The position numbers were made by a program, and so were the translations under genes. The notes below the pieces were generated by a model. The model made no database searches, had not been told where the DNA came from, and saw only the letters and a program-made list of their open reading frames with translations. Shown here one piece after another: positions 18,661 to 48,195 of a DNA stretch of 64,000 nucleotides (position 1 is the first letter of the stretch; the number at the start of each line of letters is the position of its first letter). Source of the stretch: Mobula hypostoma (taxonomy: Eukaryota). The stretch lies in NCBI RefSeq assembly GCF_963921235.1, contig NC_086117.1:25730001-25794000 (forward strand), in the 5' to 3' direction.

Positions 18661-18715
18661 GAACTCTACAGAGTGGGAAAGTGGATTTGATGTAAAAGTT
18701 CAGGAGACTTATTAT

Positions 18716-23607: not shown

Positions 23608-23978
23608 TGTTTAGTGAGTGAAAGACACCGAGCCTGTAAGGCAGATGCCAAACCACTGGAATTTCTGGACAATGGGATTGTAGATCAACTGCAAACCGAG
23701 AACTCTTTCAATGAATGGCCTTCTTTAGTACAGCAAGGTTTTATAATATTAGTGATTGCCATCTGCCCTGCACTGATCAAGCCCTAGCAGGAGGTTAAAT
23801 GATCAGAACAGATATTTAGGGTTGGCTAGAGATGGTCAGACATCCACCCAATACGATGCCCACCCAAATATTGGAGAAAGTATGTGTTCTGATCCGTTTT
23901 CTCATTATGTGGGCTTTTCAACCAACACTGCCTCGATACCCCCCCCAATCTACTTCCTAAATAAACCAAGACTCTTAC

Positions 23979-24079
23979 CAATACTCAAAGACATGGTCCA
24001 ATAGAGCAACAATAGGAGGTCCTTCTGATGATGAATGCTCATAGACCAAACCACAAGATCCATCCTCTCCAATAATGAA
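23979..24079 (-). CDS. CRAT: CRAT exon 8, carrying the catalytic His (FIIGEDGSCGLVYEHSSSEGPPIVALLDHVFEYC)
   Basis: Translated by hand, absent from the ORF track; 101 nt; donor GTAAGA. Confidence 0.95.
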
Positions 24080-24449
24080 CTGTGGAAAACATATGAAAAG
24101 GCAACGTCGTTAGTGGGCTGTCTTGATGCATGAGTGACAGAGATGATGAAAGTACCATCAGTACCTCAGGATTTTTGACACTGATATTTTTAAATATGAA
24201 AAAGGAACAGAAAATTCAGCCGAGATTCTGACTTGATCATTATCCAGTGATCTCTACTGGAAATTGTGTGCTGGCTGAATTTCACTGAGAACAAAATCAG
24301 TTTCAACTAGAATGGCCCCTGTGTGAAGCCACTTGTCACAAGTGATATGATGGCACTATGCATCTCCCTCTGCAATGGATACTTATCCTCATCAGCAGAG
24401 CTCAACTGATGAGGATCGATAACATCTTCTCCTAAATGACCCCCAAAAC

Positions 24450-25461
24450 AGGTGCAGCTCGAGGCTGGTGCTTAGCCCTGCACTCTACTCTCTGTACGCA
24501 CGTGACTGTGTGGCTAAGCACAGCTGCATTGCCATATACAAATTTGCCAACAAAAGCACAATTGTTGGATGAATCACAGCTGGCGACGAGTCAGTATACA
24601 GAAGTGGGATAGGACACCTACTGTAGTTGAGAGGAGCTATAACAACAGACTCTTGCTGAACATCAGCAAAAGACTGATCGGTGACTTCAGGAAGGGGAAA
24701 CAGGGTGAACATACACCAATCCACACTGGGGGGAGAGGGGTTGGAGGGGCAGAAGAGAGAGGAAAAAAATCCAATGGTGGAGAAAATCAGTCATTTTAAA
24801 TTCCTGGGCATTAACATATCAGATAACCCATTTTGGACCTTGCAGATCATTGCAATCACAAGGAAAGCACACCAATGTCTTTACTTTCTTAGAAGACAGA
24901 GGTTTGGTATATCACCGAACACTCTACTAAACTTCGACAGATATACTGTTGAAAGTATACTGACTAGTTGCATTAAGGACTGGCATAGCAGTTCAAATGC
25001 GCAGGAACGCAAGGAGTTGCAGAGAGTAGTGGACTGAGCCAAATACATCACAGACACATCGATCCTCATCACTGGTAGTATCTGCATGAGGTACAGTCTC
25101 AAGGCGGCAACACCTAACAAAGATCTCACCACCTGGGCCGTGCAGCTACCATCAGGTGAGACATACAGAAGCTCGAAGTCTCATACCACCAAGTTCCAAA
25201 ACAAGGGAAGCTACTTCCCTTCAACCATTCAGTTCTTGAAGCAACCAGCACAACCCTAATCACTACCTTAGTATATCAACGCTATACTTTGATCACTTTG
25301 TACTAAAATTTAAATTTTTTGTCCTAATTATATTTTCTGTAGTTTATATTTCTCTCCTGAATACTGTTTATATATTATGTGCTTGTGGTACTATTGCAAA
25401 TAAAGTTTTCATTGCACCTGTGCACACCTGTACATATGACAATAAACTCGACTTTGACTTT
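24450..25461 (+). mobile_element. Rex1/Babar-type LINE 3' fragment (decayed)
   Basis: HDCVA, YKFA, FKFLGINISD and CLYFLRR...TVESILT motifs; tail AATAAACTCGACTTTGACTT. Confidence 0.8.
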
Positions 25462-25879
25462 CATTATAGATCTCTAACCAATACAAAACGGTAGCAGCTT
25501 TGGAGTTTTCTCACCCCATTAAGCCCACCCCCACCCCAATCTGTTTGCTTTATTGATATATTAGAACACCAAGAACCAGACAGTGAATACCAAAGTGCTG
25601 CTGGTATTAGGCTGCAGGAAGCCGATGCTCAGATACAAATAACTGAGTGGAGTAAACAAGGGAAGTGGAATTGAAATTGATCTTATTATTGTCACATGTA
25701 CTGAGTGGGATACGGTGAAAAGCTGGCCTTGCATACTGTTCATACAAGTCAAATCATTACACAGTTATTGAGGTCGAATAAGGTAATTAAAAATAATGCA
25801 GAATAAGCTAACAGCTACAGAGAAAGTGCAGTGCAGATAAACAAGCTGCAAGATCTTAACAAGGTAGATTGTGAGGTCA

Positions 25880-26860
25880 AGAGCTCCAACCTTGTACCGT
25901 ATTTAAGTTTGCTGATGGCATCACTGTTGTTGGTCGAATCAAAGCTGGTGACAAATCGGCATATAGGAGGGAGACTGAAAATCTGGTTGAATGGTGCCAT
26001 AACGCCATCTTCTCCTTCGACATCAGCAAAACCAAAGAGATTATTACTGACTACAGGAGGAAGCAGCCAGAGGCCCTCGATCAGTAGTTTTAAACTCCTT
26101 GGTGGTAACACATCAGAGGACCAATCCTGGGACAAGCGCACAAGTATCACAAAAGCGACACGACAGTACCTCCACTTCCTTAGACGCTTGCGCAGATTCC
26201 GCATGTCATCAAAATCTTTGACAAACTTCTATAGATGTGCAGTGGAGAGGATCCTAACTGGTTGCATCCCAGCCTAGAGTGGAAACACCAATGCCGAGGA
26301 ACAGAAAAGGCTACAGAAAGTGGTGGACATAGCCCAGACCATCACAGGCAAAGCCCTCCCCAGCACTGAATATATTTATCTGGAGCACTGCCACAAGAAA
26401 GCAGCGTCCATCATTAAACACCCCCACTATCCAGGCCACTGCATCTTCTTCCTACCGGCTTTGGGCAAGAAGTACAGTACAGAAGCCCCACACCACCACT
26501 CATACAAAATGATACAACATGGAAACAAGACCTTCAGCCACTGAGTCCATGTTAACCATCAAACATGATATCAATTTACACTAATCCTTCACCAAGTTCA
26601 CCAGGCTCCTGAACCAGCGTGTATAACTTCAGTCACACTATTCTGAACTACAGACCTAAGACCTATAGACACACTTTCAAGAATTTCTTACAGCTAATGC
26701 TTTCAGCATTTATTTTATTTGCACATTTGTTATCTATCTTTGCCTGTTTAATACAGTTTCTCATAAATTTTATTTGTATTTTTTTCTGTAAATGTCCACA
26801 AATAAACAAATCTCAAGGTAGTGCATGGTATATATATATATACACACACTTTGATAACAA
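25880..26860 (+). mobile_element. Rex1/Babar-type LINE 3' fragment
   Basis: FKLLG...LHFLRRLRRF.MS.K.LTNFYRC.VE.ILTGCI. Confidence 0.8.
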
Positions 26861-26889
26861 AGTTGTTTGCACGTTGATCTTACCGTACT

Positions 26890-27670
26890 AGGGAACCATT
26901 TAATATTTTTATAACAGCAGGATAGAAGCTGCCCTTGAGTCTGGTGGTTGGGACCTAAAGGTTTTTGTGTTTTCTGTCCCGCTGAACAACAGGGAAGAGA
27001 GAATGTCTGGAATAGGTGGGTTTTTGATACGAGGCAGGGAGAAGTGCATACAGAGTCCATGGAGGAGATGCTGGTTTCTGTGAGGTGCTGAGCTGTGTCC
27101 ATAACTCTACGGTTTCTTGAGGTACATACTGAGCAGCTGTGACACACCCAAATAGGATGCTTTCTATAGTGCATCAATAAAAGCTTAAGGGTTGATGGGG
27201 ATATGCCGAAACTCTTTAGTCTTGTGAAGAAGTAGAGGCATTGGTGAACATCTTTGGTTTTGGTCGAATCAGGACAGGCTGTTGGTGATGTTCACTCCTA
27301 GTAACTTGAAGCTCTCAACCTCAGCACCATTCACGTAGACAGGAGCAAGCACAATGCATCTCTTTTTGAAGTCAATGACCAGCTCTTTTTGTTTTGCTGA
27401 CTTTGAGGGAATGGGATGTTGTCACGACGCCATAAACCCTCTATTTCCTTCCTTTACTCCGACTCATCATTATTTGAGATACGACCCACTGCAGTGCTGT
27501 CATCTGGGGTTGGAGCAATATCTGATCATGCAGTCATGAGTGAACAGGGCGCTGAGGACACAACAGTGTGGAGCACCAGTGTTTAGAATAATCGTGGCAG
27601 AGGTGTTGCTGCCTTTCCTTACTGACTGTGGTCTATTGGTCAGCAAGTTAAGGATCCAGTTGCAGTGGGA
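26890..27670 (-). mobile_element. Rex1/Babar-type LINE fragment
   Basis: Degenerate antisense copy of the same RT 3' region. Confidence 0.7.
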
Positions 27671-28213
27671 AATGGTTCACTCCAGGGGTCCAGATAATGG
27701 AAACAGAGAGAAGACTGCGTGCAAGGAGGAGAATAGGAGGGAAGAGGCCCTTCGGGTTGCTATCTGTTACCTTGTTGAACTTTGAGCTCACATGATGTTA
27801 CTGTTCTATCTCTCCTCCCCCTTCCTATCTCACAACCCTTCCACCCTGCTTCAACCAGCCCTTAAGGCTTGTGCTTGCGAAGGAATTGAAGGAGTTCAGA
27901 AAACAATAATAGTACCTTTAAAGTGTAGGCAAAGAACATTTCAAAGATCTTTAAAACAATTGGAAAGAAAATTATTCATAGAGCAGCTATAGTCACACTG
28001 CCAATGCACACAGTAACATCCCCAATTAGTCCCAGATCAATATTCCTATATACTCTTCAGATATATGTACAAATACAGCCATACACATAGACTTTAAAAA
28101 AAAAACACCTATGTTGATTATGCTTGATCAGAGCCTGACCCAGTTGCTGCCCAGAGGCTGACTGCAACCCCTCACATGCCTGCCCCCCAACATACCTGCA
28201 ACCCCTCACATAC

Positions 28214-28392
28214 CTGCAGGGTTTTGTCAAACCACCTGTTGCCACTGTTCCACCGACTACCTCCACCATGCAACATCTGTGCCGCAATGTGACTCATGTA
28301 GAGTTCGTCTGACACCTTTGGCACTGGAGCATCCAGGCAGAGGGTGAAGATGCTCCGCTGGATACACTTCACAGACTCCTTGTTAACCTTAT
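28214..28392 (-). CDS. CRAT: CRAT exon 7 (DKVNKESVKCIQRSIFTLCLD...NRWFDKTLQ)
   Basis: NRWFDK family motif; 179 nt; AG/GT boundaries. Confidence 0.96.
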
Positions 28393-29370
28393 CTGGAGGG
28401 GCCCGGGGGAAGCAGAAATAGTAAGCACAATTTTAAAATTCTGCAGAGAGGCATTATAGGAAGTTAAAATTAGCTCACACAAATAATGATCTAGTATATT
28501 CCGTTATCACAATATAATGGCAAACAATCACTGGGTTCAAGTGCATAGCTCAGTAAGAACAAGGAGACTAGGAGAACTCCCTGTTGTTTCAAATTCTTCC
28601 ACTGGGTCTGGGCAATCCTGCCAACTCATTCCCAACTTCCCCATGAAAAATAGTTTTAAGCCACATACAGTTGCAGTCCAACTGGTGTCAGATATGGACT
28701 TCCAAGATTTTGAGTTAGCAAAATGGGATAGTGATATAGTATAATTCCAAGTAAGGATGGCATCTGATTTGGAAGAGAACTTGGGGTGAAGGGAGAACCA
28801 GGTTCCCATTGGCTTTCGAAACAGTAAAAACTGCAGGTTTCAGAAGTACTATCAAAGAAGCCTTGGGCACTGTGAACCAGTGTGAACCAGTGCACTGGAG
28901 GGACGAAGGTGTAAGGTCCAAGATTTTGGGTGAGTGCAGAGCTTCTGCCCTGGGTTGTCTTAAGCTTCCTGAGTATTCAGCAGCACTGCCTTTATCTACT
29001 AGTATTGCATCACACTCCTAACATGCCCGTAGATCAGCTTAGCCAAGATTCTGACAGAAATACTAAAGCTAGCCGGTGTCCCATGCAAACCATTCCTGAC
29101 CCCCTTCGAACAATTCCCAAGTGTAGGAATATGTGTGGACTTCAGGACATAGACAGTGATATTAAACCTGATCCTAATTCTCTGTGAGAAGAATGAACAT
29201 GGATCGTTATTGGAGCTATATCATGCAAAAAAAAACCTAAGAAACTTTTGTAAAAGTACAGTTCCTTTGACAATTTCAATGCTCCAACGGTATTTACATT
29301 CAATAATAAACTTCTGAATTATAATCACTGAGATAATAATGAATGAAGCAATTATTTTATGAAGAGCAAC

Positions 29371-29545
29371 CTTTGATTAGCGTGTTGTATGCATTTGCCC
29401 AGCTGTTTCGATGGCCAGTTGTAAGGATCCCAATTGGCTCTTTGTTTGTCTGGAGTGAGGAATGCCAGATCTTCTCCAATTGCATGTAAAGCTGGTCCAC
29501 AGTTAAGGGGCTACCATCGCTGTTATACACAAAGAGCTCAAAGAA
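29371..29545 (-). CDS. CRAT: CRAT exon 6 (FFELFVYNSDGSPLT...AYNTLIK)
   Basis: Inside ORF 29357..29623; 175 nt; weak donor AAG|GTTGCT. Confidence 0.95.
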
Positions 29546-30810
29546 CTGCAAAATACAGATGGAAATCGTGAACTGAAAGTGTGGACTGAAGCTCACAAAG
29601 CAGAACAGGCCAGCATTCAGCACAGTGACAAAGTGAGTTTGAATTAGTCTCAGCGTCCCAGCCTGGAGACAAAATTAGTCTAGATCTCTTACTCGATTAC
29701 CACAAAGTGACGTCACCTTCTTCTCACTAGAAATGCTTACATGTGGAATTTGTTGGTGGGGGTGGGGGGGGGGATAGGAAAAAGTAGTTGAAGGTATTAT
29801 ACGGTCCACTACAAAATCTGCTACACTCCATTTGTGGCAACTGGGTCCTTCATATCCTGCTGCAAACAAGCACGTTTTGTTTTCTGATGATTTGAGTATT
29901 GAATTAACTTTTGCACAATCATCAGTGATTAACTCAACTGCTGACTCAACAAGGAGGTCAGGTGATTTATGAAGCAGGATATCAGAATCTCACTGCTGCC
30001 CCCAAGAACTCCTGTAGCAAGGATCTCCAACAAACACAACCACTTCCTTATTTCAAAAAAAAAATCAAAGAACACTGCAGAATCAAATCAAAGAAATTAG
30101 ATGTTAAAAAACAGAAAATGCTGGAAACATTCCGATCAAATTCTGACAAAGGGTCATTGACCTGAAATCTTTAATTGTTTCTTTCCAAGTTTTTTTTTGC
30201 CTGACCTGAATTTTCCCAGCATTTTCTAGTTTTATACCATCACCTTTTATACAAGACTGACTCCAATCAGTGAAGCTATCCCAGTGGTCAGTTTTACCCA
30301 GGTTCTTTGATGTCACACCGGGTCAAATTCTGTTGTGATACCCTTGGCCTCTGGAATTTGGATGGTTTTACCATCTGAATCGAGGTCATGGAAAGGTCTG
30401 CAAATAAGTGGTCATGATGACATTCAAATGAAGCACGAATTATTAGTGGGAAGTTATTGGTAGCATTGATAGCGTGACTTTCCATCAGCTTGCTAATAAT
30501 CGATGGCAGAATTAAACTCTCATGACTACTGATTAAAATAAAATGTAGCAGCTGGATTTGACCAGCATTGCGTGTTGTGGGGCTTTCCCCACTTATTTCT
30601 GGGTCAATGATTTAAAAAAATAGATTAGTTCCTGTGGTTTGTTTTCAACTAATTAATGTACCTTGGTGGCCCCACGATACAAGGTGAATTAGACAGACCT
30701 TGAATTGCAACGCGAGACAGAAAAGAAAGAAACGTTACTTCAGGGCAGAAACATGGGCAAAGAGAACTTAAAAACCTTTAGCACACTCAAGCAAATGCAA
30801 GCCAACCTAC

Positions 30811-30973
30811 CTGGAAGTTGTGCACAATTGTTACATGGGTTGGTTTTTTAGTTTGGGCATAGTTGACAAAAGAATCACTTTTAGGACCCGGGATCCTGCA
30901 GGATGACAGGATCTGGTAATACTGGTTCATGCAGAGCGGGCTCCCGCCTAGACTCTCCACAGGAAGGGTCTCA
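30811..30973 (-). CDS. CRAT: CRAT exon 5 (ETLPVESLGGSPLCMNQYYQILSSCRIPGP...HNFQ)
   Basis: Inside ORF 30787..30981; AG/GT boundaries; 163 nt keeps frame. Confidence 0.96.
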
Positions 30974-31060
30974 CTGAGCAAAGGAACAAAAGAGGAAAGT
31001 GTTTACTCAGAACAAGACAGAATGACCTGATAAAAACTACAAATGCGCAAAATTTTCAGT

Positions 31061-31576
31061 CGTTCAGTGGCCACTTTATTAGGTATGCCTACTCGTTAAT
31101 GTAAATATCTAACCAGTCAATGCATAAAAGCATGCAGACATGGTCAAGAGGTTCAGTCATTCGGACCAAACATCAGAATGGGGAAGGAACGTGATCTAAG
31201 TGACTTTGATCATGGAATGATTGTTGGTGTCAGAAGGGGTGGTCAAGTATCTCAGAAACTGCCGATCTTCTGGGATTGTCACGCGTTAGCAGTTTCTAGA
31301 GTTTGCAGAGAATTGACAGATAAGCAAAAAACATCCAGTGAGTGGCAGTTCTGTGGGCAAAAACGCCTTGTTAATGACAGAGGTTAGAAGAGAACAGCAG
31401 ACTGGTACACGCCGATAGGAAGGCAACAGTAATTTAAGTAACCATGTGTTACAACTGTGGTGTGCAGAAGAGCAACCCTGAGCACATATCACGTCAAACC
31501 TTGAAGCGGATGGGCTACTGCAGCAGAAGACCACGCCAGGTTCCACTCCTGTACCTAATAAAGTGGCCAGTGAGTG
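31061..31576 (+). mobile_element. Non-autonomous Tc1-like element
   Basis: Inverted ends CAGTGGCCACTTTATTAGGTA and TACCTAATAAAGTGGCCAGTG; HTH remnant MGKERDLSDFDHGMIVG; ends before TA. Confidence 0.9.
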
Positions 31577-31686
31577 TAGGTTTTAAAGTCTGACTATAAA
31601 GTTTGACCCTTTCGAACTCTGCAATGCCTCCATCCTCAACCTGCACCATTTCTACTACTGATTACGTGTCTTCACCTGTCCAGGTT

Positions 31687-31895
31687 ATTACTATTACTAT
31701 TCCTCTCTATGCCTTGTGGCGCATCGGGTGGCAACCTTGCCCTTTCTTTGTCTGTTTTTTGTTTTACGAGGCCGCGAAGCTAGCTCGACCCAGCATGGAT
31801 GGAAAGCATATTAAGAGCTGAACAGATTCGAACCCGGGACCATTTGCCTCCAAGTGTGGTGCTGAAGCCACTACACCTACACCACTGGCTGGCAG
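31687..31895 (-). mobile_element. tRNA-derived SINE
   Basis: A-box-like GGTGTAGTGG and B-box GGTTCGAATC on the minus strand; (AGTAAT)-type tail; 9-bp TSD GTCCAGGTT at 31678-31686 and 31896-31904. Confidence 0.8.
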
Positions 31896-32207
31896 GTCCA
31901 GGTTTTAAAGATTAGCTTTATTTGTCACATCAAAGCAGACGCTGAAGTGTGCTTGGAATGACCACTGCATGCACTTCTCCAGCTTGCTCGTCTCCTTCAA
32001 AATGCTTCTTAACTCCTATCAGTCTGACCTGCGAGCCCTCTCCACAACTCCACTTGCAACTCAACGTCAATTTTTACTCCAATTTATGGTAAAGTGCCTG
32101 GAATATTTTATTAAGTAAAAAAGAAATTGTATTAAGAATCTATATTTTCTTTTTTTCACCAACTTCCCCGTGTTCCTCAGTGAAGTCATAATTTGAACTT
32201 ACTTGTC

Positions 32208-32301
32208 TTTCTTTCTTTTCTTTTTAAATCTTTTTATTAAATTAGTACACAAAAAGTAAACCATGTAGACACTAACACACTGTTGCAATATAAATTTGCA
32301 A
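32208..32301 (-). mobile_element. 94-bp retroposon 3' tail inserted at the CRAT exon 4 donor
   Basis: AATAAA plus A-rich tail on the minus strand; 12-bp TSD AACTTACTTGTC at 32196-32207 and 32302-32313. Confidence 0.8.
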
Positions 32302-32308
32302 AACTTAC

Positions 32309-32362
32309 TTGTCAATCATGGATTTAAAATCCAGCACACCAGCGATCAATTTGGCAGCGAAT
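32309..32362 (-). CDS. CRAT: CRAT exon 4 (FAAKLIAGVLDFKSMIDN)
   Basis: 54-nt exon matching human FAAKLIEGVLDFKVMIDN; donor GTAAGT. Confidence 0.95.
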
Positions 32363-32536
32363 CTGGAAGAGAAGATTGGGACTGAACATTTACAAATGGC
32401 AACAGAACACATTAGACAGGTCCAGGCACTGCTTTACATTGCCCTGGGCAGTTTTATTCACTAATGTTTGAACTTCACATACAAATGGATTTTCATTTCA
32501 TGCTCTCAGGATATCTCGAAGCATTCCATAACCAAT

Positions 32537-33160
32537 GCAACAGGCACAAAATGCTGGAGGAACTCAGCAACCCAGGCAGCATCTATAGAAAAGAGTAAAC
32601 AGTCAGCGTTTCAGACTGAGACCCTTCATCAAGACCGGGAAAAAAGATGCGAAGTCAGTGTAAGAAGAGAGGGGTAGGGGAGGAAGGGGGTAGGTGATAG
32701 GTGAAACCGGGAGATGGGGAGGGCTGAAGTAAAAAGCTGGGAAGTTGATTGGTGAAAGACCAAGAGCTGGAAAAAGGGGAATCTGATAGGAGAGTTCAAA
32801 AGACCATAGAATAAAGGGAAGGGGGGGGCAGAGGGAGGTGATCCATCTGGTGCTCCTCCCCCTTCCCTTTCTTCCATGGTCTTCTGAACTCTCCTATCAG
32901 ATTCCGCCATGTCTAGCCCTTTACCTCTTTTACCAATCAACTTCCCAGCTCTTTACTTTAACCCTCCCCCTCACCCGGTTTCATCTATCACCTACCACCT
33001 TCTCATCTCCCCCACCCCCCCCCCAATCTTGATGAAGGGTCTCAGTCTGAAATGTCGACTGCTTACTCTTTTCCATAGCTGCCACTTGGGCTGCTGAGTT
33101 TCTCCAGCATTTTGTGCGTGTTGCTTTGGATTTCCAGCATCTGCAGATTTTCTCTTGTTT
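32537..33160. repeat. Fold-back pair of Penelope-derived terminal repeats (about 600-bp imperfect palindrome)
   Basis: 32537-32830 is the approximate reverse complement of 32860-33126. Confidence 0.85.
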
Positions 33161-35724
33161 GCCAGAACCATGTGGTCCTTTTGAATTCTTTTCACTGTTG
33201 TAATGCAGGAAATTTGTGCCAAACCAGGTACTATAACCAACAATACAATAATGACCAGATATTCTTGTTATTTTGGTTGAAGGATAAGCATTTATTAGTA
33301 AATAAAAATATTGGCCAGGATAACTCATTGAAATGTGATCGGAGAGGATTGATTTGGATGATGTAAGATTGGTTCCCCTAGCTGGAGAATCCAGAACTGA
33401 ATGCATGTTCATAGCACGAGGTTGGCTGTTTTAGACAGAACTGGGGAGCTTCATTCAATAAAGCTGTGAATCGCTGGAACTCTCTGCACAAGGTAGGTGT
33501 TCAGTTATTAAATACAATCAAATATAAAAACTGTAGTTATCAATCCCATTATTTGAAGCCCCAAATTATCCTGGTCAAACATTTTGGTCCTTTCTAATCC
33601 ATCCACGTCTCTTTTGAAGAGACAATTAATTAGAACTACATATATTAATAATTAAAACTACATACATATCCTACTCCGGAACAGGTCTCAATGTTAATGT
33701 GCTGCATGTTGGTGCATCTTGTTCTGAAGAAATTCTTACCTCCAGCTGCATTATAACAGGAGCCTAATAATGTTGAGATATTTTTGTTTTACAGTCAGAA
33801 CTGTTATGAACAATTTTGAGTCTCATATCTAGGACAGATGTGCTGGAGAATATTAGTAGGTCTGCCTGGATGAATTCCTGATTTTGTCATTATACACGTG
33901 GGGATACATGGAAAGAAGCACCAGAAGTGAAAAGAGGATGATGTTTTGCAACATGAATTTAGAGAGCCAAGTCAGATTAACGAGCAGGACCTCCAAAGCA
34001 ATATCTGTATCATCTCCAATGCCACAGCAGAGTGAGTATAGGTGAAGAGAGGTTAAATGAACGCATGAATAAAGAGATGATGTAGGAGGAAGGGCTTTGG
34101 ACTCCTTGGATCACTGGGATGCTTCTGAGAAGGAGATACCAGTACAAGCAGGATGGGTTGCTCCTGAATCACATTGGGACCAACATTCTTGCTGGGAGGT
34201 TTGCTCGTGCTTTTGGGGAAGGTTTTGAACTAATTTGACAGGGAAATTATGGCGAACAGAGAAATGAAGATGAGTCAGAGAATGATAATGCAGAACAGAG
34301 ATAGTTTTGTAGATCATTTGGACCAAATAATTTGTTTCCATGCAAGAATGAGCCTTAATATCGCTATATACTATATAGAAACACAATTAACAGACTGTGT
34401 CCACAAAGACTGAACTAAGCAGTGGTGAGGTGAGAGAAATAAACAATGACCATCTCTCATTGGGGGGGGGGGGGGGGCTGGCGGCCTGAAGTAGAAGCTG
34501 GTAGTCCAATTACCACTTTGCTGGAGTTCCAGCCCAATTTCTAATCCTTTCCCTTACTCCTGATATTATCCACATTCCATTGCAAGGTTGAAGGTAGTGC
34601 GTCATGTTCCCTGGCCTTTCAGTCACTGTGACTATGCTGAAGAGCTGTCCGTAGTCAATAATATATTCAGGGGATGGGCTGAGAGCTGTGGAAATTAAGC
34701 ATTGTCTCCAGACTACAGCATAGCCTCCAGAGCATGCCTGAAATCGACATACTCCTGTCAGATAATGGCCGCCCCTTGTAAAGAGCTGGGTCAGGCCTGG
34801 AGACTCCCAGCCACACCCCCACAACTTTAATAGTTTTACAGGAAAACTGGCAAATCAATATGAAGCAAGAAACACAATTTTCTCGTCATATACAGGAAAT
34901 CCCATACCCTTGGGGATCATGATCAATCCTGCTCTCGAACACACTGATATGCTAAATGGTTTTTGGGAGCCTGGGTGTTACTGTCACTCACCTTTTATTT
35001 GACATGCACTTTAATTCCAACATCTGCTGCCTTCATCCTAGTTTACGGCAAATCCCCTACACGCCCTCTGACCCGCATTAGCTCTTGTTCTGGCCCTAGC
35101 AGAGTTTTAAAAATTCACACCCTTCTGCTCAGATCTTTCCATAGGTTCTTTATGACTTCCTCTAATGGTACAAACTTCCAAGGTGACGGTGCTTCGCTGA
35201 TTGCAGCTTCTTGCATGTTATTCCCAAACTGCTATGACTCCACCATTGGTGGTGATACCTTCAGTTCTGGAATACCCTCTCTAAATCTCTTTCTTTCAGA
35301 AAGAATTCTGGCCAACGCCCTGTCCACAGGCAGACTTGCTATGCTGAATACAGATTGTTCAATGGTTGAGTCATGGTTGATTATTTGTCTAACTGAAGCT
35401 AAATGCAGGATGCTACCCTTATTCCAATAGAGACTGTTAACTCAAATCATATCAGGAATCAAACTTGCTTTGTGTCACCAAACTCAGCTACACGCACAGA
35501 GCTATTCAAGAGCTCCAGTGAAGACAATAACATTTTACAAAATAAAGGCAAACATCAGGATTTAGGCAGTAAAAACTTAGATTGTTAGAGTGATTTTTGT
35601 GGTTAGGACATGCAGCAATTAACTTTAACTGACTTCAGCCACTAGCCTTCAGGTCTGAATATGCATAGAAGATTAAATTGAAAATGCAGCTCAGAAATTC
35701 AGACCAGACACACCAGGAAACAGG

Positions 35725-36793
35725 TACGTAACTAATTGTCTACATACGACAGAGAGACCACAGTCAGTCCGTGTTGGCAGGAACATCTCTGACTCCATCA
35801 CACTGAGCACTGGATCCCCACAAGGCTGTGTGCTTAGCCCATTGCTGTCTACACTGATAACACATGACTGTGCAGCCAGATTCAAGGAGAACCTGATCAT
35901 TAAATTTGCAGATGATACCACAGTGGTGGGGCTCATCAGCAAAAATGATGAAACAATGTACAGGGAGGAGGTCAAACACCTAGAGAACTGGTGCAGTGAT
36001 AACAACTTGATGCTTAATGCCACCAAAACCAAGGAGATGATCGTCGATTTCAGACGGTCTCAGCCTGAGCACACACCCCTCAGCATCAGCGGCTCCACAG
36101 TGGAGAGAGTGGAAAACATCAAGTTTCTTGGCGTGCAGATCTCGGACAATCTCACCTGGTCCAGGAACACCACTGGGATTGTGAAACGGGCCCAGCAGAG
36201 ATTGCACTTTCTGAGGAAGTTTAAGCAAGCACCACTCCCCACTAACATCTTAATTACATTCTACAGAGGCATGGTTGAGAGTGTGCTGACCTTTTGCATC
36301 ACAAGCTGCAGTGCTGTTGACAAAAAAGCCTTGCAGAGGGTGGTTAGGGGAGCAGAGAAGGTTATTGGGGTCTCCCTACCTTCTGTCCAAGACCTCTTTC
36401 AGAGTCGATGCCTCCAGAAGACACGGTACATCATTAAAGACCCCTCACACCCTCTCCATGAACTGTTTGTTCTTCTGCCATCAGGCAAACGTTACAGGAG
36501 CATCAAAACTAAAACCACAAGGCTACTAAACAGCTTCCTCCCACAGGCAGTCAGACTGCTAAATAGCCGCTCTACCTGACTCTGCTTTGGACACTTTTAA
36601 CTTGCACTGGACACTTATAACTTGATTTTAACTGACATGTGGCTGTTGTGTTTTACTATTTATTGTTATGTTTATTATTTAGTGTTGCGTTTGTTATGTT
36701 ATGATTGCACTGCTCCTGAGAAACACTGTCTCATTCTGCCCTGCAGAGCTGATGTACAGTTAGAGTGACAATAAAGTTTTTGAATCTTGAATC
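35725..36793 (+). mobile_element. Young Rex1/Babar-type LINE, 5'-truncated (ORF 35830-36579)
   Basis: PQGCVLSPLL, IKFADDTTVVGLI, KTKEMIVDFRR and SFLPQAVRLLN motifs; AATAAA plus (TTGAATC)n tail. Confidence 0.92.
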
Positions 36794-36887
36794 CAATCAA
36801 TTCAATCCCATTGCATGGACACAACAGTAATTAACACCTATTTTGGGTGTGATGGTGGGAAAATCCAGGCATTTGAAACTGTTCTAA

Positions 36888-37044
36888 CGCAAACACGAGG
36901 AAAACTGCAGATGCTGGAAATTCAAGCCACACACATCAAAGTTGCTGGTGAACGCAGCAGGCCAGGCAGCATCTCTAGGAAGAGGTACAGTCGACGTTTC
37001 GGGCTGAGACCCAAGGGCTCACCAGCAACTTTGGTGTGTGTGGC
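36888..37044 (-). mobile_element. Short fold-back Penelope-derived repeat
   Basis: Same terminal repeat as at 10881 with a short inverted end; flanking direct repeat TTGAAACTGTTCTAA at 36873-36887 and 37045-37059. Confidence 0.85.
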
Positions 37045-37693
37045 TTGAAACTGTTCTAAGTAGTTCAAAGGAAGCATCGTAAATATGGATTTGTTTGAAT
37101 TCTCCTGAATTTTCTTTGATCTTTAGCACATAAAATGTTGTGTAGTGCTGGATTGAGCAGACCTCCTGCACCGAAAGGGTCTCTCTCTTTCTCTCCCCTC
37201 TCTCATGACTCTTAAGGCTGTCAGCTTATTGGAGATATTTGTCAAATAGAGAGACTGCTTCATATCTACCAGTACTTCTCTCCGGTGACTTCATTCACGC
37301 TACAAGATCATGGTGGCCAGTGAGAACAGGAAACATTTACAGCTTCTAATATAATCAACTATCATCTGCTACTGTAGATCTAAGCAAACTGGCGGAAGGA
37401 ACAAAGGGAAGAAAACAAACTTCACAAATTGTTAGGATCTAGAAAGCTAATTCAATTACAATAATCAAAAGCGAAATAACAATGCACTTGGAAAGGAGGG
37501 TAATAATCAAAGAACAGGAAGTCAGTACCCTTCAAACTATTAAGGGGGAGCACAATAGGTTAAACAACCCACTCGTCAACACCTTCCAAAGAAAAAACAG
37601 AAAAGCGCTCAAGAAGAGAGCGATTTTCCTCCCATGTAAGCCACGAGCAGAAGTAAATTAAATTCTACTACGAGTCCACTGCCACACCATTAC

Positions 37694-37812
37694 CTGAGCT
37701 GTCCTTGACGATCGTGATAATCCTGTTTTGGCAATACCACGCCGGGACTGGAATGAATTACCACAGGAAGTCTGTATTCCAGGTAAGCGGTCCTCAGCCA
37801 CCACTCCGAAAG
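37694..37812 (-). CDS. CRAT: CRAT exon 3 (LSEWWLRTAYLEYRLPVVIHSSPGVVLPKQDYHDRQGQLR)
   Basis: Translated by hand; matches CRAT; AG/GT boundaries; 119 nt. Confidence 0.96.
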
Positions 37813-38487
37813 CTGAACAGAAAAGAAATGAGAAAGTAAACTGGAAGAGGCATGGTTCAAGTATCTACCTAGACTGCAAGTGGAGTAAGGCTTTCCAGCA
37901 ATGGAGAGTTAACTTCCCGATATGTGGTTCTACCTCTTTGCCTGTATCACCCACTCCCCCCACAAAATAGATACTCATCCCTTGAGAGTTCTGCAGCATT
38001 AAGGCTGAATTACTCCCCAAACTGATGAAACACGTAAAGGGGGAGAGAGAATAAAGAAACATTTAAAAAAAACACGCAAAATGAGCTTCCATGCATTTAG
38101 CACATAAATTTACAAATTTACCAATTATTTACTCAAATGTCATCTCTGTATTTCAGTCCACCAGCAGCAATCTTGCACTCCTTTCTTACCCAGAATCTAT
38201 CTACTTCTGCTTTAAAAATATACAAAGACTCCGCTTCCACCATCCTCTGGAGGTTGAGACTCACAAAGACTAAATCCACTGAGAAAATGTCACCTTTTTG
38301 TGTTAAATGGTCAACTCCAAATTCTGTTTTAAATGTGATCCACTGGCCCATTTTCTCCCACAGATGAAACATTCTCTCCATATTCACTTTGTCAATTCCT
38401 CTCAGGTTCTTGTGTGTTTTCAATCACTCTCACTCCTCTAATCTCCACTGGTTATAACATTAAAAAAAATTAAATCTTAGTTCGTAC

Positions 38488-38766
38488 CCAATTTTCTGTC
38501 TTCCTTGCTCTTCTTTCCAAGCTTGCTTGAAGCCTCTCTCCCACTCCGCCCTTTTCAGCAAATTCCTTCACTATTTGTTTAGTGTGTTCTAACTCCTCCT
38601 GACTGAGGATAGGCTCCAATGTCAGCAAGTAGCGTTCAAGAGTTTGTTGGAGAGGAGGAACGGGCAGACGCGGCAAAGACTTTTGGTGGGCGAGGTATCG
38701 CCCAGGCAACTTTGTAGGTGCAATGGGTCGCACTAAGCAGCCAGACCGCAGTGCGCTGGGTCTGAT
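38488..38766 (-). CDS. CRAT: CRAT exon 2 (IRPSALRSGC...AHQKSLPRLPVPPLQQTL...KTENW)
   Basis: LPRLPVPPL carnitine-acyltransferase motif; tctag acceptor and GT donor; 279 nt. Confidence 0.95.
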
Positions 38767-39671
38767 CTAGACAACAAAACCAGATCATGATTAGGTAGCA
38801 AGTTATAAATAAAGACCTTCCGATCATGTTGTTGCTTTAACATAGAAAGATAATTATCAGAATAAATATGACAAACATTAGGACAGGGACAGGTGATTAC
38901 AATCCTGATCAGAGCAACTGTAGGTTTTAAGGAGTATACCAAAGGAAAGAAAAAGATAGAAAAACTGTAGTTCAGGAAGCAATTTCATTGTGTTTGGTCT
39001 TGACAACTGAAGCCATTGGTGCAGCACTGAAAACTGGGAATATGCAAGCCACAATTGAAAAGCTCAGAGATTTTGGAGGTGGATGAAAAAATTACCACTT
39101 TTGGAAAACTTTATAGCCTGGTGAACTCTTATTTTATGCAGAACCTGCAAGGATTTGAATTTTTAGTCGGTCAATGACATTGAACATTGTGGAGACAACA
39201 GCTGCTGACAAATGGCTCCTGTGTTCAAACCATATAGTGCAGACAGGAGCTCAGGTTTCACTTCACTGAATGTCAGAATAAATATTGCACCTCATAATAA
39301 CCACCTAGAGAAAAGAAAACATTTGTACAAACTAAAAACAATCGTAAACATCCCCAAAATCTTGCCTTGCCTCATCACCTTTGCAAGCAAGTGAGAATAT
39401 GAGATTCTCTACAAAATTGAATTCTCTGAGAGGAAATTAAGGATCTGTGGTTAATAAGCAGTGACTTGAATGGATATTCTAGAATAGGACTGTAACTCCG
39501 ATTAAATTATCTGAAGCATCTCCCAGATATAGAACACAGATCTTTAACCCTGCTCTGCAAGCTAATATACAAGCATGTTAGGGAAATTAATTACAGTTTT
39601 GTGTTAGTAGGCAAGCACTGGCAACTGCTTTGTTCTCAGAAAATGTTGATCTGTAATAAATTATACTGTAC

Positions 39672-39695
39672 CTTTTGGGAATTCTTTCTATCCAT
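39672..39695 (-). CDS. CRAT: Putative alternative CRAT first coding exon (MDRKNSQK)
   Basis: ACG-ATG-G Kozak context, 24 nt, then AAG|GTACAG donor in phase 0, compatible with exon 2. Resembles the recalled pigeon CRAT N-terminus MDRKQKQAEK. GC box at 39739-39745. Confidence 0.65.
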
Positions 39696-41269
39696 CGTAG
39701 GAACATAAACATAAAAGTCAAAGCTTTGCCCCTCTAATCCCGCCCTGCTTTCTTTCCACTCCAGAGCAGTTAATCTGGGGTTGAAATCACACACACATGC
39801 ATTAAAGGCTGCGCTTAACAGCCTTCTCTTTCCTCGTCCTAAATCTGTCAAAAACAAAAATAAAAAGAAACGAAAGAAGAGTTCCAAATATTTTAATGCC
39901 AGTAATAATACAGTCCAGACTCATGGGAGACGTGGCTAAAAATTCCCACTGCAAACTTTAAATTCGAGTTGTAAACTTCTAAAAAGGTGAAGGTGTGAAG
40001 ATTCAGAGAATCTCAGTATAAAAGTAGGCTGCTTGGCTCTTCTTGGAAATGTGGGTTAAGAACTCCAATCAATGAGGAGAACAATGTCTTAGCTTCATAT
40101 CCTCTATGTAAGCCAAGCCCATTACTATAGCAGGTATTCTCCAACTCAAAACACTGTCCTCATCAGGCAATGAAGTTCTAATTAAAATGTCTACACTGGA
40201 AAAGTTAATTCATCTGCTCTCTACAGATATTGAGTTTACTCCTGTACTTCATTGCTATCGATCTCAAGTGATGGGGTTTTGGAACAATATCAAAACCTTT
40301 GCCTGCTAACCACTCAGGGAAGCAGAAGACCTCAACTTGTCTGGGAAAAAAAAAGAATATCCAGGCACATGGGTGTCATCTGTACAGATGTGAGCTACTT
40401 TAAGGCAGGAAGCTACTAGAACAGGCTCTGAATGCTACAGTGTCCACATGAAGCACAACAACTGGAGGAGGCACCAGCTTGCAGATCTGCCCCCACTTTA
40501 TATTTTTTTAAAGAAGATTCTTTATATTTTATAATGGTTGAACTTTGTCTTTTACTGCATGTCATGCCCTGACCAACGCACCACAGCAAATTCCTAACAA
40601 ATGTAAATGTATATGGTGAATAAAGTTAACTCTTGTTAGGAGCCTTCCTTCTCGGGGGAAGCCTGAGGGGAACGGCGGTGGGGGGGGAGGGGGCGGGGGG
40701 GAAGATAAATAAATGAATCAGGAAAACAAACTTCCTTTTGTCTCCTATTCTTCTCTTGATAATTTTGAATTGTGAGAGAAGAAAAATATGGCAAACTCAT
40801 AACTGATTCTCATTGGTACATTTTAAACCCTCAGCTCAAGTGATTCCTCCTAAAGACCTAAAAAAATTTATATTGCACATTAGAGCCAATCAAGTGCTTT
40901 TGAGTTGTTTTCGGTAACATACAACCAATTTTGCATACATGTCCCAATGGGTTTGCTAACCAGAAATCTTATACCCCTCCCTCCCCCCTGCCCCCCAACA
41001 CCACCACTGTACCAGTTGAGGGATCTCTTTTTCACTGTCACAATTTATGTCTCATCTAGAGAGGAACCCATATTATCTACTAAGACATAGCTGACAACAT
41101 TTCCTACACATTTGTGAAGTATTTAGTACGATTTTTTTTTGAAATTCAAGTGTCTGAAACTCATTGACAAGAGCAATATGTATTACCCACCCCTGATTAT
41201 ACTTGAAATGATAGCGATGAAATACATTCTTACACTGCTGGGCTCCTTCTGGTGAAGGTAGCCCCACAA

Positions 41270-47567: not shown

Positions 47568-47594
47568 CAAAGCACGTCCTAAAATCCCCAACAT
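47568..47594 (-). CDS. CRAT: CRAT coding exon 1 (MLGILGRAL; start of putative mitochondrial leader)
   Basis: ATG TTG GGG ATT TTA GGA CGT GCT TTG followed by donor GTAAGT. 27 nt, phase 0, the same size as human exon 1 (MLAFAARTV). Lies about 600 bp from the PTPA ATG. Confidence 0.85.
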
Positions 47595-48195
47595 TTTCCC
47601 TTCCCACCGCTGGACCAAAAGTTAAGCTTCAAAACATCAGTACGACAACCCAAATAAGATCAGAAGGCGGGGTGAACACCTTGAGTGGCGTTATCATTCT
47701 CTTATCACCCTGCAGATCTGTGACACAAACGCATCAATCAGCAATCAGCAACGGGACGTTACTCTTGGTCTCCATGTTTGTGCGGGGCAAAAGCGCCCTG
47801 CGAACTAGAAAATATGTTAATTTTTTTACACTAGTCAACTTTTGTTAAGGGAGAACGGATGTAGCTTATAAAACGTTTAAAATTATTTATGGCCCTAAAA
47901 GAATGGTTTAAAAAAACTAGTTAAAAGGACAGCGTGCCCCTCACAATAATGGAAGGTCAGTATTTTGATTTTTAACTTAGTTATTCTTCCCACAGTTGTC
48001 GCAGATAGAAACTTCAATATTAGAACGTTATTCGTGTTTCTCTCACTCTTGAATGCAACTAAGTTGTGTACAACTGCATATTTTTTGCAGGAGGCCGAGG
48101 TGACAAGGTGAGAAAGGTCGAAGATCGAAGGGTGGGTGAGGAGTTGTGTTGCACTTCCGGGTTGGGCGTTGTGAAGGAGTTTGCAGGGTGTAAAT
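47595..48195. promoter_or_regulatory. CRAT/PTPA bidirectional promoter and 5' UTRs
   Basis: 601 bp between divergent ATGs; ETS/GABP-type CACTTCCGG at 48152-48160; GC-box-like GGCGGGG near 47666; local CpG enrichment. Confidence 0.8.

What the first reader, a model, noticed from the sequence alone, without database searches (positions are those of the whole stretch)
39660..39760. Second CRAT first exon (MDRKNSQK): a possible mitochondrion/peroxisome isoform switch
Seen: about 900 bp upstream of exon 2, an ATG in strong Kozak context (ACGATGG) encodes MDRKNSQK and ends at a phase-0 donor that joins exon 2 in frame. A GC box (39739-39745) and a DR1-like GGGGCAAAGCTTT lie just upstream. Exons 2-3 contain no Met; the next in-frame Met is in exon 4, so the internal exon-2 AUG used for the short mammalian isoform is not available, yet the protein ends in SKL. 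Recalled: pigeon CRAT starts MDRKQKQAEK. Inference: this gene makes its leader-less (peroxisomal or cytosolic) isoform from an alternative promoter, and the exon may be conserved between cartilaginous fish and birds. Caveat: two out-of-frame ATGs lie just upstream.
Basis: partly seen in the sequence, partly recalled or inferred. Interest (0 to 1): 0.8.

Follow-up and report, generated by a model that had tools for sequence, protein, structure and literature searches.

The report
Conserved alternative start exon of CRAT
An optional 173-base exon in a devil ray's carnitine acetyltransferase gene is truly spliced into the mRNA, where it stops the mitochondrial leader's reading frame and supplies a new start (MDRKNSQK). 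The same exon occurs from sharks to birds and mammals and is already in database gene models, so it is real and ancient but not new.

Summary
ATG 39695 (ACGATGG) encodes MDRKNSQK, ends at a GT donor, and is joined to exon 2 (38766) in assembled RNA contigs of three runs of this species; the same junction appears as a matching contig overhang in one run of a related ray.

The exon is not a first exon. The same contigs splice it, at AG acceptors giving exon starts 39844 or 39774, to a true exon 1 at 47594-47568 (MLGILGRAL, donor TTG|GTAAGT). Another contig joins exon 1 directly to exon 2. It is therefore a cassette exon.
- Skipped: the mRNA encodes the leader-bearing precursor, 630 aa, identical to RefSeq Mobula hypostoma CRAT isoform X1.
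- Included: the exon-1 frame stops at once (ATT TAG), and MDRKNSQK becomes the only start that reads into CRAT.

M[D/E]RK-type N-termini are annotated in most elasmobranchs, turtles, birds, a crocodile, frogs, a caecilian and echidna. The genomic exon and its AAG|GTACAGTA donor are conserved, a chimaera carries a copy with a broken donor, and a bat intron holds a homologue.

The alternative-promoter reading is not supported. The mitochondrion-to-peroxisome switch is plausible (an acidic, hydrophilic peptide replaces the hydrophobic start; SKL is kept) but untested. The kind is known (human CRAT 1994, bird isoforms), so novelty is low.

The parts
47568..47761 (-). Exon 1 of CRAT. The 5' UTR is at least 167 nt; the true 5' end is unknown. 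The first coding segment is ATG 47594-47592, CDS 47594-47568 = MLGILGRAL, with donor TTG|GTAAGT.
   Evidence: The 30-nt overhang of the contigs at 39845 and at 38767 matches 47569-47598 uniquely, with 0 matches expected by chance. Sequence read. The X3 contig carries 194 nt beyond the junction.
39672..39844 (-). Cassette exon, long form (173 nt). Acceptor tttgacag|ATTTAG, donor AAG|GTACAGTA.
   Evidence: Contig pieces cover 39672-39845 in X3, X4 and X5, flanked by exon 2 on one side and exon-1 letters on the other. Conserved in Pristis, Heptranchias and Callorhinchus.
39672..39774 (-). Cassette exon, short form (103 nt), using the alternative acceptor aaccccag|ATTAAC.
   Evidence: X5 has a loose end at 39775 with the same exon-1 letters. 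The acceptor is conserved in Pristis and Heptranchias. The Hypanus RefSeq X1 model reads ...LQ|LTALEWK across it.
39839..39841 (-). TAG that ends the exon-1 (leader) reading frame one codon into the long cassette. In the short form the frame ends at TGA 39720-39718.
   Evidence: ORF tracing of the three transcript forms; coordinates. ATTTAG/ATGTAG is conserved in chondrichthyans.
39672..39695 (-). Alternative coding start: ATG in ACGATGG context, MDRKNSQK, phase-0 end.
   Evidence: It is the only ATG of the cassette-containing mRNA that reads into the CRAT frame. ATGGA..AG...AAG|GTA is invariant across 7 species.
39704..39712 (-). Two out-of-frame upstream ATGs (39712, 39706; weak context T..T) opening a 24/22-codon ORF that overlaps the MDRK start and ends in exon 2. 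Two more upstream ATGs lie at 39802 and 39798 in the long form.
39727..39745 (-). Function unknown; it could be a splicing enhancer or a regulatory element.
   Evidence: Identical in Mobula, Pristis and Heptranchias, with one change in Callorhinchus. (A/C)TTAGAG recurs about 45-50 nt before the ATG in turtle, echidna and bat.
38488..38766 (-). Common exon 2 (93 aa, IRPSALRSG...RKTENW). The first 25 residues precede the catalytic core.
   Evidence: Residues 22-93 align to solved CRAT structures at E 3.5e-26. The Pfam domain starts at residue 43 of the 630-aa form.
5023..38766 (-). The 13 common coding exons of CRAT, ending ...HGSKL-TGA (stop 5025-5023). All have AG/GT sites.
   Evidence: Gene model. 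Its exon1+common translation equals RefSeq XP_062929766.1 residue for residue.

Best explanation
The stretch is the 3' part of an ancient, alternatively spliced internal exon (a cassette, 39844/39774-39672) lying between exon 1 and exon 2 of the carnitine O-acetyltransferase gene of a devil ray (Mobula hypostoma or a near relative).

When the cassette is skipped, translation from the exon-1 ATG gives MLGILGRAL-IRPSALRSG..., the classical precursor with a hydrophobic-basic N-terminal leader.

When it is included, the exon-1 reading frame stops immediately (ATT TAG in the long form; TGA 39720 in the short form). The only ATG that reads into CRAT is then the cassette's own, in strong context. The product is MDRKNSQK-IRPSALRSG..., 629 aa, with the same catalytic body and the same C-terminal SKL.

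Replacing the hydrophobic start of the leader with an acidic, hydrophilic peptide most likely weakens mitochondrial import. More enzyme would then follow its PTS1 to peroxisomes or stay in the cytosol.

Shown here: both splice forms, the ORF logic, and conservation across jawed vertebrates. Inferred: use of the MDRK start by ribosomes (about 0.75) and the change of compartment (about 0.5).
For: RNA evidence:
- Junction 38766<->39672 with GT..AG ends is in X1 (58.6), X3 (19.3, a 5211-nt contig) and X4 (10.7). X5, a related species, shows it as an overhang reading IKPSALRSG.
- The cassette is joined upstream to letters that match only 47569-47598.
- X4 record 17 joins those same letters directly to exon 2, i.e. 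skipping.

Reading frames: exon 1 reads ATG..MLGILGRAL TTG|GTAAGT.

Gene model: the model equals RefSeq Mobula hypostoma isoform X1 and matches PF00755 at 676 bits.

Annotated orthologues:
- MDRKNFQK in Mobula birostris X2, MDRKNYQK in Pristis X3, MDRPNSQK in Amblyraja X2, and MDRKKDFLK/MDRKKDSQK in eight shark genera.
- MERKQQQSEK in turtles, MDRKQKQAEK in birds, MDRNQLPKQ in a crocodile, MERKLQAAQ and similar in frogs, MERKRLADE in a caecilian, MDRRQQEAEK in echidna.
- These usually sit beside an ML... isoform of the same species.

Genomic conservation:
- The order exon 1 - cassette - exon 2 holds in Pristis, Heptranchias, Callorhinchus, Caretta, Zosterops, Tachyglossus and Pteropus.
- The coding length varies only by whole codons (24/27/30 nt), and the donor AAG|GTACAGTA is conserved.
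- The cassette is the only real block conserved between Mobula and Callorhinchus in the 8.8-kb interval (E 7e-17).

Composition: 37 M[D/E]-type N-termini average 2.1 acidic residues and hydropathy -1.9 in the first 10 residues. 70 ML-type N-termini average 0 acidic residues and +1.4.
Against: - Five ATGs precede the MDRK start in the long form: the exon-1 ATG with A at -3, two at 39802/39798, and two at 39712/39706. Translation of the MDRK form needs leaky scanning or reinitiation and may be inefficient.
- The 25 basic, acid-free residues of exon 2 that precede the core are kept, so some mitochondrial import may persist.
- The evidence comes from assembled contigs, which cannot give reliable proportions, strands or transcript starts.
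- No targeting predictor or experiment was available.
- Callorhinchus has lost the donor (AAG|TT), so the exon is dispensable in at least one lineage.
Confidence: 0.6

Rival explanations
1. One reading: the MDRK exon is an alternative first exon driven by its own promoter (GC box, DR1-like site) inside intron 1.
For: The X1 contig runs unspliced from 39672 up to 40686, which could be a transcript starting upstream of the cassette. Bird RefSeq models extend the ORF far upstream of MDRK, so in birds it might be a first exon. Contigs cannot exclude additional start sites.
Against: - X3, X4 and X5 contigs splice the exon at two conserved AG acceptors to exon 1 at 47568.
- The GC box and the DR1-like motif are inside the exon.
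- The DR1-like sequence is not conserved even in other rays and sharks.
- X1 has low-level cover over 28 of 30 bins of the intron, and its contig stops at a low-complexity repeat (40640-40720). This fits retained pre-mRNA better than a start site.
Confidence: 0.12
2. The cassette is a regulatory 'poison' or uORF exon. Its job is to terminate the leader ORF and load the 5' UTR with upstream ATGs, lowering CRAT output (translational repression or nonsense-mediated decay). The MDRK protein would be a minor, non-functional by-product.
For: The stop comes one codon after the acceptor, and four further upstream ATGs follow. The non-coding 5' two-thirds of the exon is as conserved as the coding part in chondrichthyans.
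Against: - The ATG, its frame, whole-codon length changes and the phase-0 donor are kept from rays to echidna and a bat.
- The start has a strong Kozak context.
- The peptide keeps an M-[D/E]-[R/K/D]-K-like pattern.
- Cassette-containing contigs are as deep as or deeper than the skipping contig (X4: 10.7 against 8.0, a rough figure).
- From memory, unchecked: the pigeon cDNA with this N-terminus gave active enzyme (Johnson et al. 1995).
Confidence: 0.15
3. The MDRK isoform is still imported into mitochondria through the exon-2-encoded basic stretch. The exon then tunes translation or import efficiency rather than switching compartment.
For: Both isoforms share IRPSALRSGCLVRPIAPTKLPGRYL, which has 5 basic and no acidic residues. 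Net charge over the first 30 residues is +6 against +5. The short mammalian isoform is said to lack 21 residues, far more of the leader than is replaced here (from memory).
Against: Every lineage replaces the hydrophobic start with a peptide carrying 1-3 acidic residues, which is unusual for presequences. SKL or an equivalent PTS1 is retained throughout.
Confidence: 0.25

Closest known systems
Human CRAT 5' alternative splicing (Corti, DiDonato, Finocchiaro 1994, Biochem J 303:37; cited in PMC10156126 and PMC9549241)
   Same: One gene yields mitochondrial and peroxisomal carnitine acetyltransferase through divergent 5' mRNA sequences. Exon 1 encodes 9 leader residues (MLAFAARTV in the bat locus) and the PTS1 is retained.
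   Different: As recalled, the human short form is thought to start at an internal Met of exon 2. The ray has no Met there, and the inserted exon supplies its own ATG. I could not read the 1994 paper, so whether its 'divergent sequence' is this same exon is not established. A bat intron 1 does hold a homologous ATG..AAG|GT block.
Bird CRAT isoforms and the pigeon CAT cDNA (Johnson et al. 1995, Biochem J 305:439; reference seen in PMC11820905)
   Same: The N-terminus MDRKQKQAEK + ARP.GLLKP is encoded by a homologous exon with the same AAG|GTACAGTA donor, lying between an ML... exon 1 and exon 2.
   Different: It is 10 codons rather than 8. Bird gene models extend the frame upstream, so the exon's 5' boundary may differ. 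The pigeon sequence itself was not retrieved here; its start is recalled, not checked.
RefSeq predicted isoforms in elasmobranchs (e.g. Mobula birostris X2 XP_072096497.1, Pristis pectinata X3 XP_051892936.1, Amblyraja radiata X2 XP_032905233.1)
   Same: Same exon, same junction, near-identical peptide. The ray models come with two transcripts per protein or with an upstream-extended form, matching the two acceptors seen here.
   Different: These are automatic models without any stated mechanism or localisation.
Yeast CAT2 (Elgersma et al. 1995) and Candida tropicalis CAT (Ueda et al. 1998), as cited in PMC9549241
   Same: A single gene gives both the mitochondrial and the peroxisomal enzyme by including or excluding the N-terminal leader, with a C-terminal PTS1.
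   Different: The yeasts use alternative transcription or translation starts, not a cassette exon. The mechanisms are not homologous.

Membership tests
Carnitine O-acetyltransferase (CRAT; Pfam PF00755 Carn_acyltransf) | Full-length match to the choline/carnitine acyltransferase domain | tested here: met
   The window's gene model equals P0323. P0323 matches PF00755 at 676 bits over profile positions 1-574 of 574.
Carnitine O-acetyltransferase (CRAT; Pfam PF00755 Carn_acyltransf) | Orthology to vertebrate CRAT rather than ChAT, CROT or CPT | tested here: met
   Exon 2 scores best against solved CRAT structures (E 3.5e-26) against ChAT 7e-14, CROT 1e-10 and CPT2 1e-7. It is 100% identical to RefSeq 'carnitine O-acetyltransferase isoform X1 [Mobula hypostoma]'. 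In the seven orthologous loci fetched, PTPA is the upstream neighbour in six; this was not checked in the window itself.
Carnitine O-acetyltransferase (CRAT; Pfam PF00755 Carn_acyltransf) | Catalytic His in the YEH...EGPP motif, and a C-terminal PTS1 | tested here: met
   GLVYEHSSSEGPPIV is present and the C-terminus is HGSKL. That this His is the catalytic residue is from general knowledge.
Alternatively spliced cassette exon | Both the inclusion junctions and the skipping junction are seen in RNA | tested here: met
   Inclusion: 39672->38766 plus exon 1->39844/39774. Skipping: exon 1->38766 (X4 record 17). All, with the overhang mapped. These are contigs only, from 2 studies and 2 species.
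Alternatively spliced cassette exon | Canonical, conserved splice sites with conserved flanks | tested here: met
   AG|...|GT at both ends. Acceptors and donor are conserved in chondrichthyans, and the donor from ray to echidna.
Alternative first exon / alternative promoter | Transcripts begin at the exon, with no upstream splice | tested here: not met
   In X3, X4 and X5 the exon is spliced to exon 1. The unspliced X1 contig is ambiguous. Contigs cannot show 5' ends, so a minor promoter is not excluded.
Dual mitochondrial/peroxisomal targeting by N-terminal isoform switch | Two N-termini that differ in presequence character, with a shared PTS1 | tested here: met
   First 10 residues: hydropathy +1.9 with 0 acidic residues against -2.2 with 1 acidic residue in Mobula. 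The same trend holds in 70 against 37 orthologue N-termini. SKL is shared. These are crude indices, not a trained predictor.
Dual mitochondrial/peroxisomal targeting by N-terminal isoform switch | Different subcellular location of the two products | not testable with these tools
   This needs fusion proteins, cell fractionation or at least trained targeting predictors.

The most novel reading that the evidence does not exclude
All jawed vertebrates, therian mammals included, share one roughly 450-million-year-old 'stop-and-restart' cassette exon in CRAT. It ends the leader ORF and restarts translation from its own M-[D/E]-x-K start. The extramitochondrial isoform of mammals would then begin at this exon's ATG (bat: MEDGQQKEK|exon 2) rather than, or as well as, at the internal Met of exon 2 assumed since 1994.
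Probability: 0.3. Interest if true: 0.55.

Novelty: already known. Interest (0 to 1): 0.3.

Why it matters
CRAT moves acetyl units between mitochondria, peroxisomes and the cytosol, and how cells place one gene's product in several compartments is still debated (PMC10156126, PMC11852590). This locus shows, with RNA support, a clean switch: an optional exon closes the leader's reading frame and offers a new start. It also shows that the exon is far older and more widespread than the single human and pigeon reports suggest.

For annotation, the practical points are that the MDRK exon is exon 2 of the transcript, not a first exon, and that it has two acceptors. For biology, the value lies in a ready-made natural pair of N-termini, conserved in dozens of species, for testing what decides mitochondrial versus peroxisomal routing of CRAT.

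Tried and rejected
- Sequence statistics alone do not single out the exon: 27 of 172 upstream ATG..GT candidates have as good a donor.
- Candidate exon MLLFFSL...ALWLP|GTAAGC (43491-43399), beside the CpG-rich stretch 43501-44000, has no junction or deep contig. Dropped.
- Searching with exon 2 alone returned mostly genomic ORF fragments of bony vertebrates and no shark. It was useful only for reaching a full-length id (P0036, Ptychodera).
- Aligning the 13 exon translations to P0036 to build a profile gave a scrambled alignment and was not used.
- Papers not held: Corti 1994, Houten 2020, Johnson 1995. The pigeon sequence was not among the cluster members listed.
- The look-up of encoding contigs found nothing for non-longest isoforms (P0326, P0265) and gave no DNA for the frog.
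- Rfam scan of 38000-48500: no match.
- DR1/PPRE reading of GGGGCAAAGCTTT: rejected. The two A's are GT or TT in Pristis, Heptranchias and Callorhinchus.
- X1's unspliced contig as proof of a promoter: rejected as ambiguous (see the rival explanations).
- My first reading of X4, 28.4 as the depth of the skipped form, was wrong. The skipping junction contig is record 17 (depth 8.0) and the inclusion contig is record 18 (10.7).
Full report
**What is at the coordinates.**
The gene lies on the minus strand. At 39695-39672 the sequence ATGGATAGAAAGAATTCCCAAAAG encodes MDRKNSQK. The ATG sits in ACGATGG and the ORF is followed by GTACAGTA. About 900 bases further on, after ttgtctag, exon 2 starts at 38766 and reads IRPSALRSGCLVRPIAPTKLPGRYLAHQKSLPRLPVPPLQQ.... 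Residues 22-93 of that exon align to solved carnitine acetyltransferase structures at E 3.5e-26, better than to ChAT, CROT or CPT2. I rebuilt the whole gene: 13 common coding exons from 38766 to the stop at 5025-5023, all with AG/GT sites, ending HGSKL. After its initiator Met, the next Met of the MDRK-started protein is residue 156, in exon 4.

**Is it more than chance?**
Not by sequence alone. The 7.2 kb upstream of exon 2 holds 172 ATG-initiated open stretches that end at a phase-0 GT. Twenty-seven of them have a donor scoring at least as well as this one on a crude matrix. The case has to rest on RNA and on relatives.

**RNA.**
Two run searches found small runs whose assembled contigs hold exon 2 completely (organism A) or at about 98% identity (organism B). 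They are labelled only 'RNA?', but the multi-exon spliced contigs show that they contain cDNA. I laid X1, X3 and X4 (organism A) and X5 (organism B) on 38420-44400.
- The table lists only one joint, 38766<->39672. It skips 905 bases with CT..AC ends on the plus strand, which is GT..AG on the gene's strand. It appears in X1 (contig depth 58.6), X3 (19.3, a 5211-nt contig) and X4 (10.7).
- In X5 the same junction appears as a 29-letter overhang at 39672 that translates as IKPSALRSG, the related species' exon 2.

**It is not a first exon.**
- In X3, X4 and X5 the piece that starts at 39672 stops at 39845. It runs on into letters that are not in the laid stretch: AAAGCACGTCCTAAAATCCCCAACATTTTC on the plus strand, 194 letters in X3.
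- X5 shows the same letters also at 39775. X4 has a 57-nt contig (record 17) in which the same letters abut 38767, that is, exon 2 directly.
- The 30-mer occurs once in the window, at 47569-47598, with none expected by chance.
- There the minus strand reads gggaaaATGTTGGGGATTTTAGGACGTGCTTTG|gtaagttt: an ATG at 47594, MLGILGRAL, and a consensus donor after 47568.
- The pieces end one base 'late' (39845, 39775, 38767) because the last base of exon 1 is G, the same as the G of each acceptor AG.
- The gene therefore has a true exon 1 at 47.6 kb. The MDRK exon is an internal cassette with two acceptors, tttgacag|ATTTAG (exon 39844-39672, 173 nt) and aaccccag|ATTAAC (39774-39672, 103 nt).
- Exon 1 can also be spliced straight to exon 2. 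That skipped form translates to a 630-aa protein identical, residue for residue, to RefSeq XP_062929766.1, 'carnitine O-acetyltransferase isoform X1 [Mobula hypostoma]'. It matches PF00755 at 676 bits.
- The window is thus from that devil ray or a very close relative.

**What inclusion does to the reading frames.**
- With the cassette skipped, the exon-1 ATG opens MLGILGRAL-IRPSALRSG... into the enzyme.
- With the long cassette, the same frame reads ...GCT TTG|ATT TAG and stops after ten codons.
- With the short cassette, it runs 27 codons to TGA at 39720.
- In both inclusion forms the only ATG that reads into CRAT is the one at 39695, which has A at -3 and G at +4.
- Before it lie short upstream ORFs. 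Two ATGs at 39802/39798 occur in the long form only. The pair at 39712/39706, in weak context, opens a frame that overlaps the MDRK start and ends in exon 2.
- The MDRK protein therefore needs leaky scanning or reinitiation. That is the main internal argument against efficient production.

**How common is inclusion?**
Contigs give one mean depth each and cannot be trusted for proportions. With that caveat:
- In X4 the skipping contig has depth 8.0 and the inclusion contig 10.7.
- In X3 the main 5.2-kb mRNA contig carries the cassette.
- In X5 the cassette pieces have depths 49.8 and 26.1, against 115 for exon 2.
- Inclusion is not a rare by-product in these samples.
- X1's contig continues unspliced from 39672 to 40686. 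X1 also has thin cover over 28 of 30 bins of the intron, and the contig ends at a low-complexity repeat. I read this as retained pre-mRNA, though a start site in that kilobase cannot be excluded.

**Relatives: proteins.**
A full-length id reached through exon 2 (P0036) let me collect vertebrate CRATs. Their N-termini fall into two classes that share exon 2.
- One class is ML-type: MLGILGRVL in Pristis, MLAILGRAM in Heptranchias, MLAFIARSM in turtles and frogs, MLALVARAA in birds, MLALAARTM in platypus.
- The other is M[D/E]-type:
  - Rays: MDRKNFQK (Mobula birostris X2), MDRKNYQK (Pristis X3), MDRPNSQK (Amblyraja X2), MDRKNSQK (within Hypanus X1).
  - Sharks: MDRKKDSQK (Heterodontus, Heptranchias); MDRKKDFLK or MDRKKDFPK (Scyliorhinus, Carcharodon, Cetorhinus, Hemiscyllium, Chiloscyllium, Stegostoma, Rhincodon).
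  - Tetrapods: MERKQQ(Q)SEK (turtles), MDRKQKQAEK (many birds), MDRNQLPKQ (crocodile), MERKLQAAQ / MEDKSVSIK / MDDKHQSEQ / MDKKLQSEE (frogs), MERKRLADE (caecilian), MDRRQQEAEK (echidna).
- Many species have both classes annotated.
The pigeon entry itself was not retrieved, and the 1995 paper is not held.

**Relatives: genomes.**
I fetched the loci of Pristis, Heptranchias, Caretta, Tachyglossus, Zosterops, Callorhinchus and Pteropus.
- In every one the order is exon 1 (ML...|GTAAG), then the cassette, then exon 2.
- Mobula and Pristis are about 96% identical across the 173-nt exon, including both acceptors and the ATT TAG.
- In a seven-species alignment the ATG, GA of codon 2, AG of codon 3, the final AAG and the donor GTA.AGTA are invariant. 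Length changes are whole codons: 24, 27 and 30 nt.
- Across the 8.8 kb between exon 1 and exon 2, the cassette (39859-39663) is the only real block conserved between Mobula and the chimaera (E 7e-17). It is by far the strongest block against Heptranchias (359 nt, 83%, E 7e-99).
- The chimaera copy still reads MDRKKESQK, but its donor is AAG|TT. This fits RefSeq using a different alternative exon there (MTSILK).
- In the bat, intron 1 holds a homologous block...GCTTAGAG...ATGGAAGACGGGCAACAGAAAGAGAAG|GTATGG. This is MEDGQQKEK in phase 0.

**The promoter motifs.**
GGGCGGG is part of a 19-nt exonic block, GGGCGGGATTAGAGGGGCA. The block is identical in three elasmobranchs and differs by one base in the chimaera. 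(A/C)TTAGAG recurs at a similar distance from the ATG in turtle, echidna and bat. It is conserved, but it lies inside the exon, so a splicing enhancer is at least as likely as an Sp1 site. The DR1-like reading fails: the two A's that create it are GT or TT in the other cartilaginous fishes.

**Function.**
The catalytic domain starts at residue 43, so the switch affects only the targeting region.
- In Mobula the first ten residues change from hydropathy +1.9 with no acidic residue to -2.2 with one.
- Over 70 ML-type and 37 M[D/E]-type N-termini the means are +1.4 with 0 acidic residues against -1.9 with 2.1.
- Presequences rarely carry acidic residues (general knowledge), and the PTS1 is kept. 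The most likely effect is therefore less mitochondrial import and more peroxisomal or cytosolic enzyme.
- However, 25 basic residues of exon 2 remain in both forms, so partial mitochondrial import of the MDRK form is a live alternative.
- These are crude indices, not a trained predictor, and nothing here measures localisation.

**Comparison with what is known.**
Reviews state that acetylcarnitine transferases are dually localised through alternative transcription or translation starts or differential splicing. They cite Corti et al. 1994 for human and Elgersma 1995 and Ueda 1998 for yeasts (PMC9549241; PMC10156126). The ray exon is the same kind of device, and the same exon as in the bird isoforms. 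It is already present in automatic RefSeq models of sister species. What I did not find stated anywhere in the papers searched is:
- that it is an internal cassette whose first codons stop the leader frame;
- that it supplies its own start codon;
- that it is shared by cartilaginous fishes, sauropsids, amphibians, monotremes and probably therians.

I could not read the 1994 paper, so I cannot say whether its divergent 5' sequence is this exon.

**Verdict.**
- Observation confirmed.
- Exon real and ancient.
- 'Alternative promoter' not supported: it is a cassette spliced to exon 1.
- 'Leader-less' overstated.
- The compartment switch is plausible but untested.
- Novelty is low because the isoform is in the databases and the principle dates from 1994-95.
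- The pan-gnathostome conservation and the possible implication for the mammalian short isoform give it modest residual interest.

Noticed in passing
window 43223-43350 (and 44178-44237): A single-copy block in CRAT intron 1 is conserved with the Heptranchias intron (81% over 129 nt, E 3e-28). In the shark the two pieces are contiguous; in the ray they are separated by about 830 bp that include the CpG-rich stretch 43501-44000. The 43220-43419 bin has summed contig depth 60.8/21.9/11.2/41.5 in the four runs, yet the pieces listed are only low-depth. There is no Rfam match. Its nature (enhancer, small RNA, exon of another transcript) is unknown.
   Followed up: partly
L006:12770-13012 (Callorhinchus milii): The chimaera keeps the homologous cassette (acceptor, GGGCGGGAATAGAGGGGCA, ATG..MDRKKESQK), but the donor GT is TT. 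The exon is probably disabled there, and RefSeq uses another alternative exon (MTSILK at L006:11373).
   Followed up: partly
L007:6575-6725 (Pteropus alecto, CRAT intron 1): A block homologous to the cassette reads ATG GAA GAC GGG CAA CAG AAA GAG AAG|GTATGG (MEDGQQKEK, phase 0). The exon may therefore persist in therian mammals. Only one therian was examined.
   Followed up: partly
window 39796-39802 versus L001 (Pristis) 18470-18500: A 1-nt difference (caaccccag versus caa-cccag) puts an upstream ATG of the long cassette in frame in Pristis. That explains its 663-aa RefSeq 'isoform X1'. In Mobula the same ATG is out of frame, so the extension is unlikely to be functional.
   Followed up: yes
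window 44790-45380, minus strand: Open stretches resemble a retrotransposon reverse-transcriptase fragment (…ADDTVIVDRISDGDEAAYKSE…, …VWYGRASAQDWKELQKVVNL…) inside intron 1. The Hypanus RefSeq X1 model appears to splice a similar piece (…RASAQDWKKLQ) onto the short cassette.
   Followed up: no
window 40640-40720: A low-complexity (CCN)n / poly-Pro-coding repeat. Contigs from elsewhere pile up at 40556-40626 (depth up to 139 in X5), and assembled contigs break here.
   Followed up: no
window 47501-48250: The highest CpG observed/expected ratio of the region (0.77-0.82) lies around and upstream of exon 1. In six of the seven orthologous loci fetched, PTPA lies head-to-head within 0.6-2.6 kb of the CRAT start, suggesting a shared bidirectional promoter. 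PTPA was not looked for in the window.
   Followed up: no
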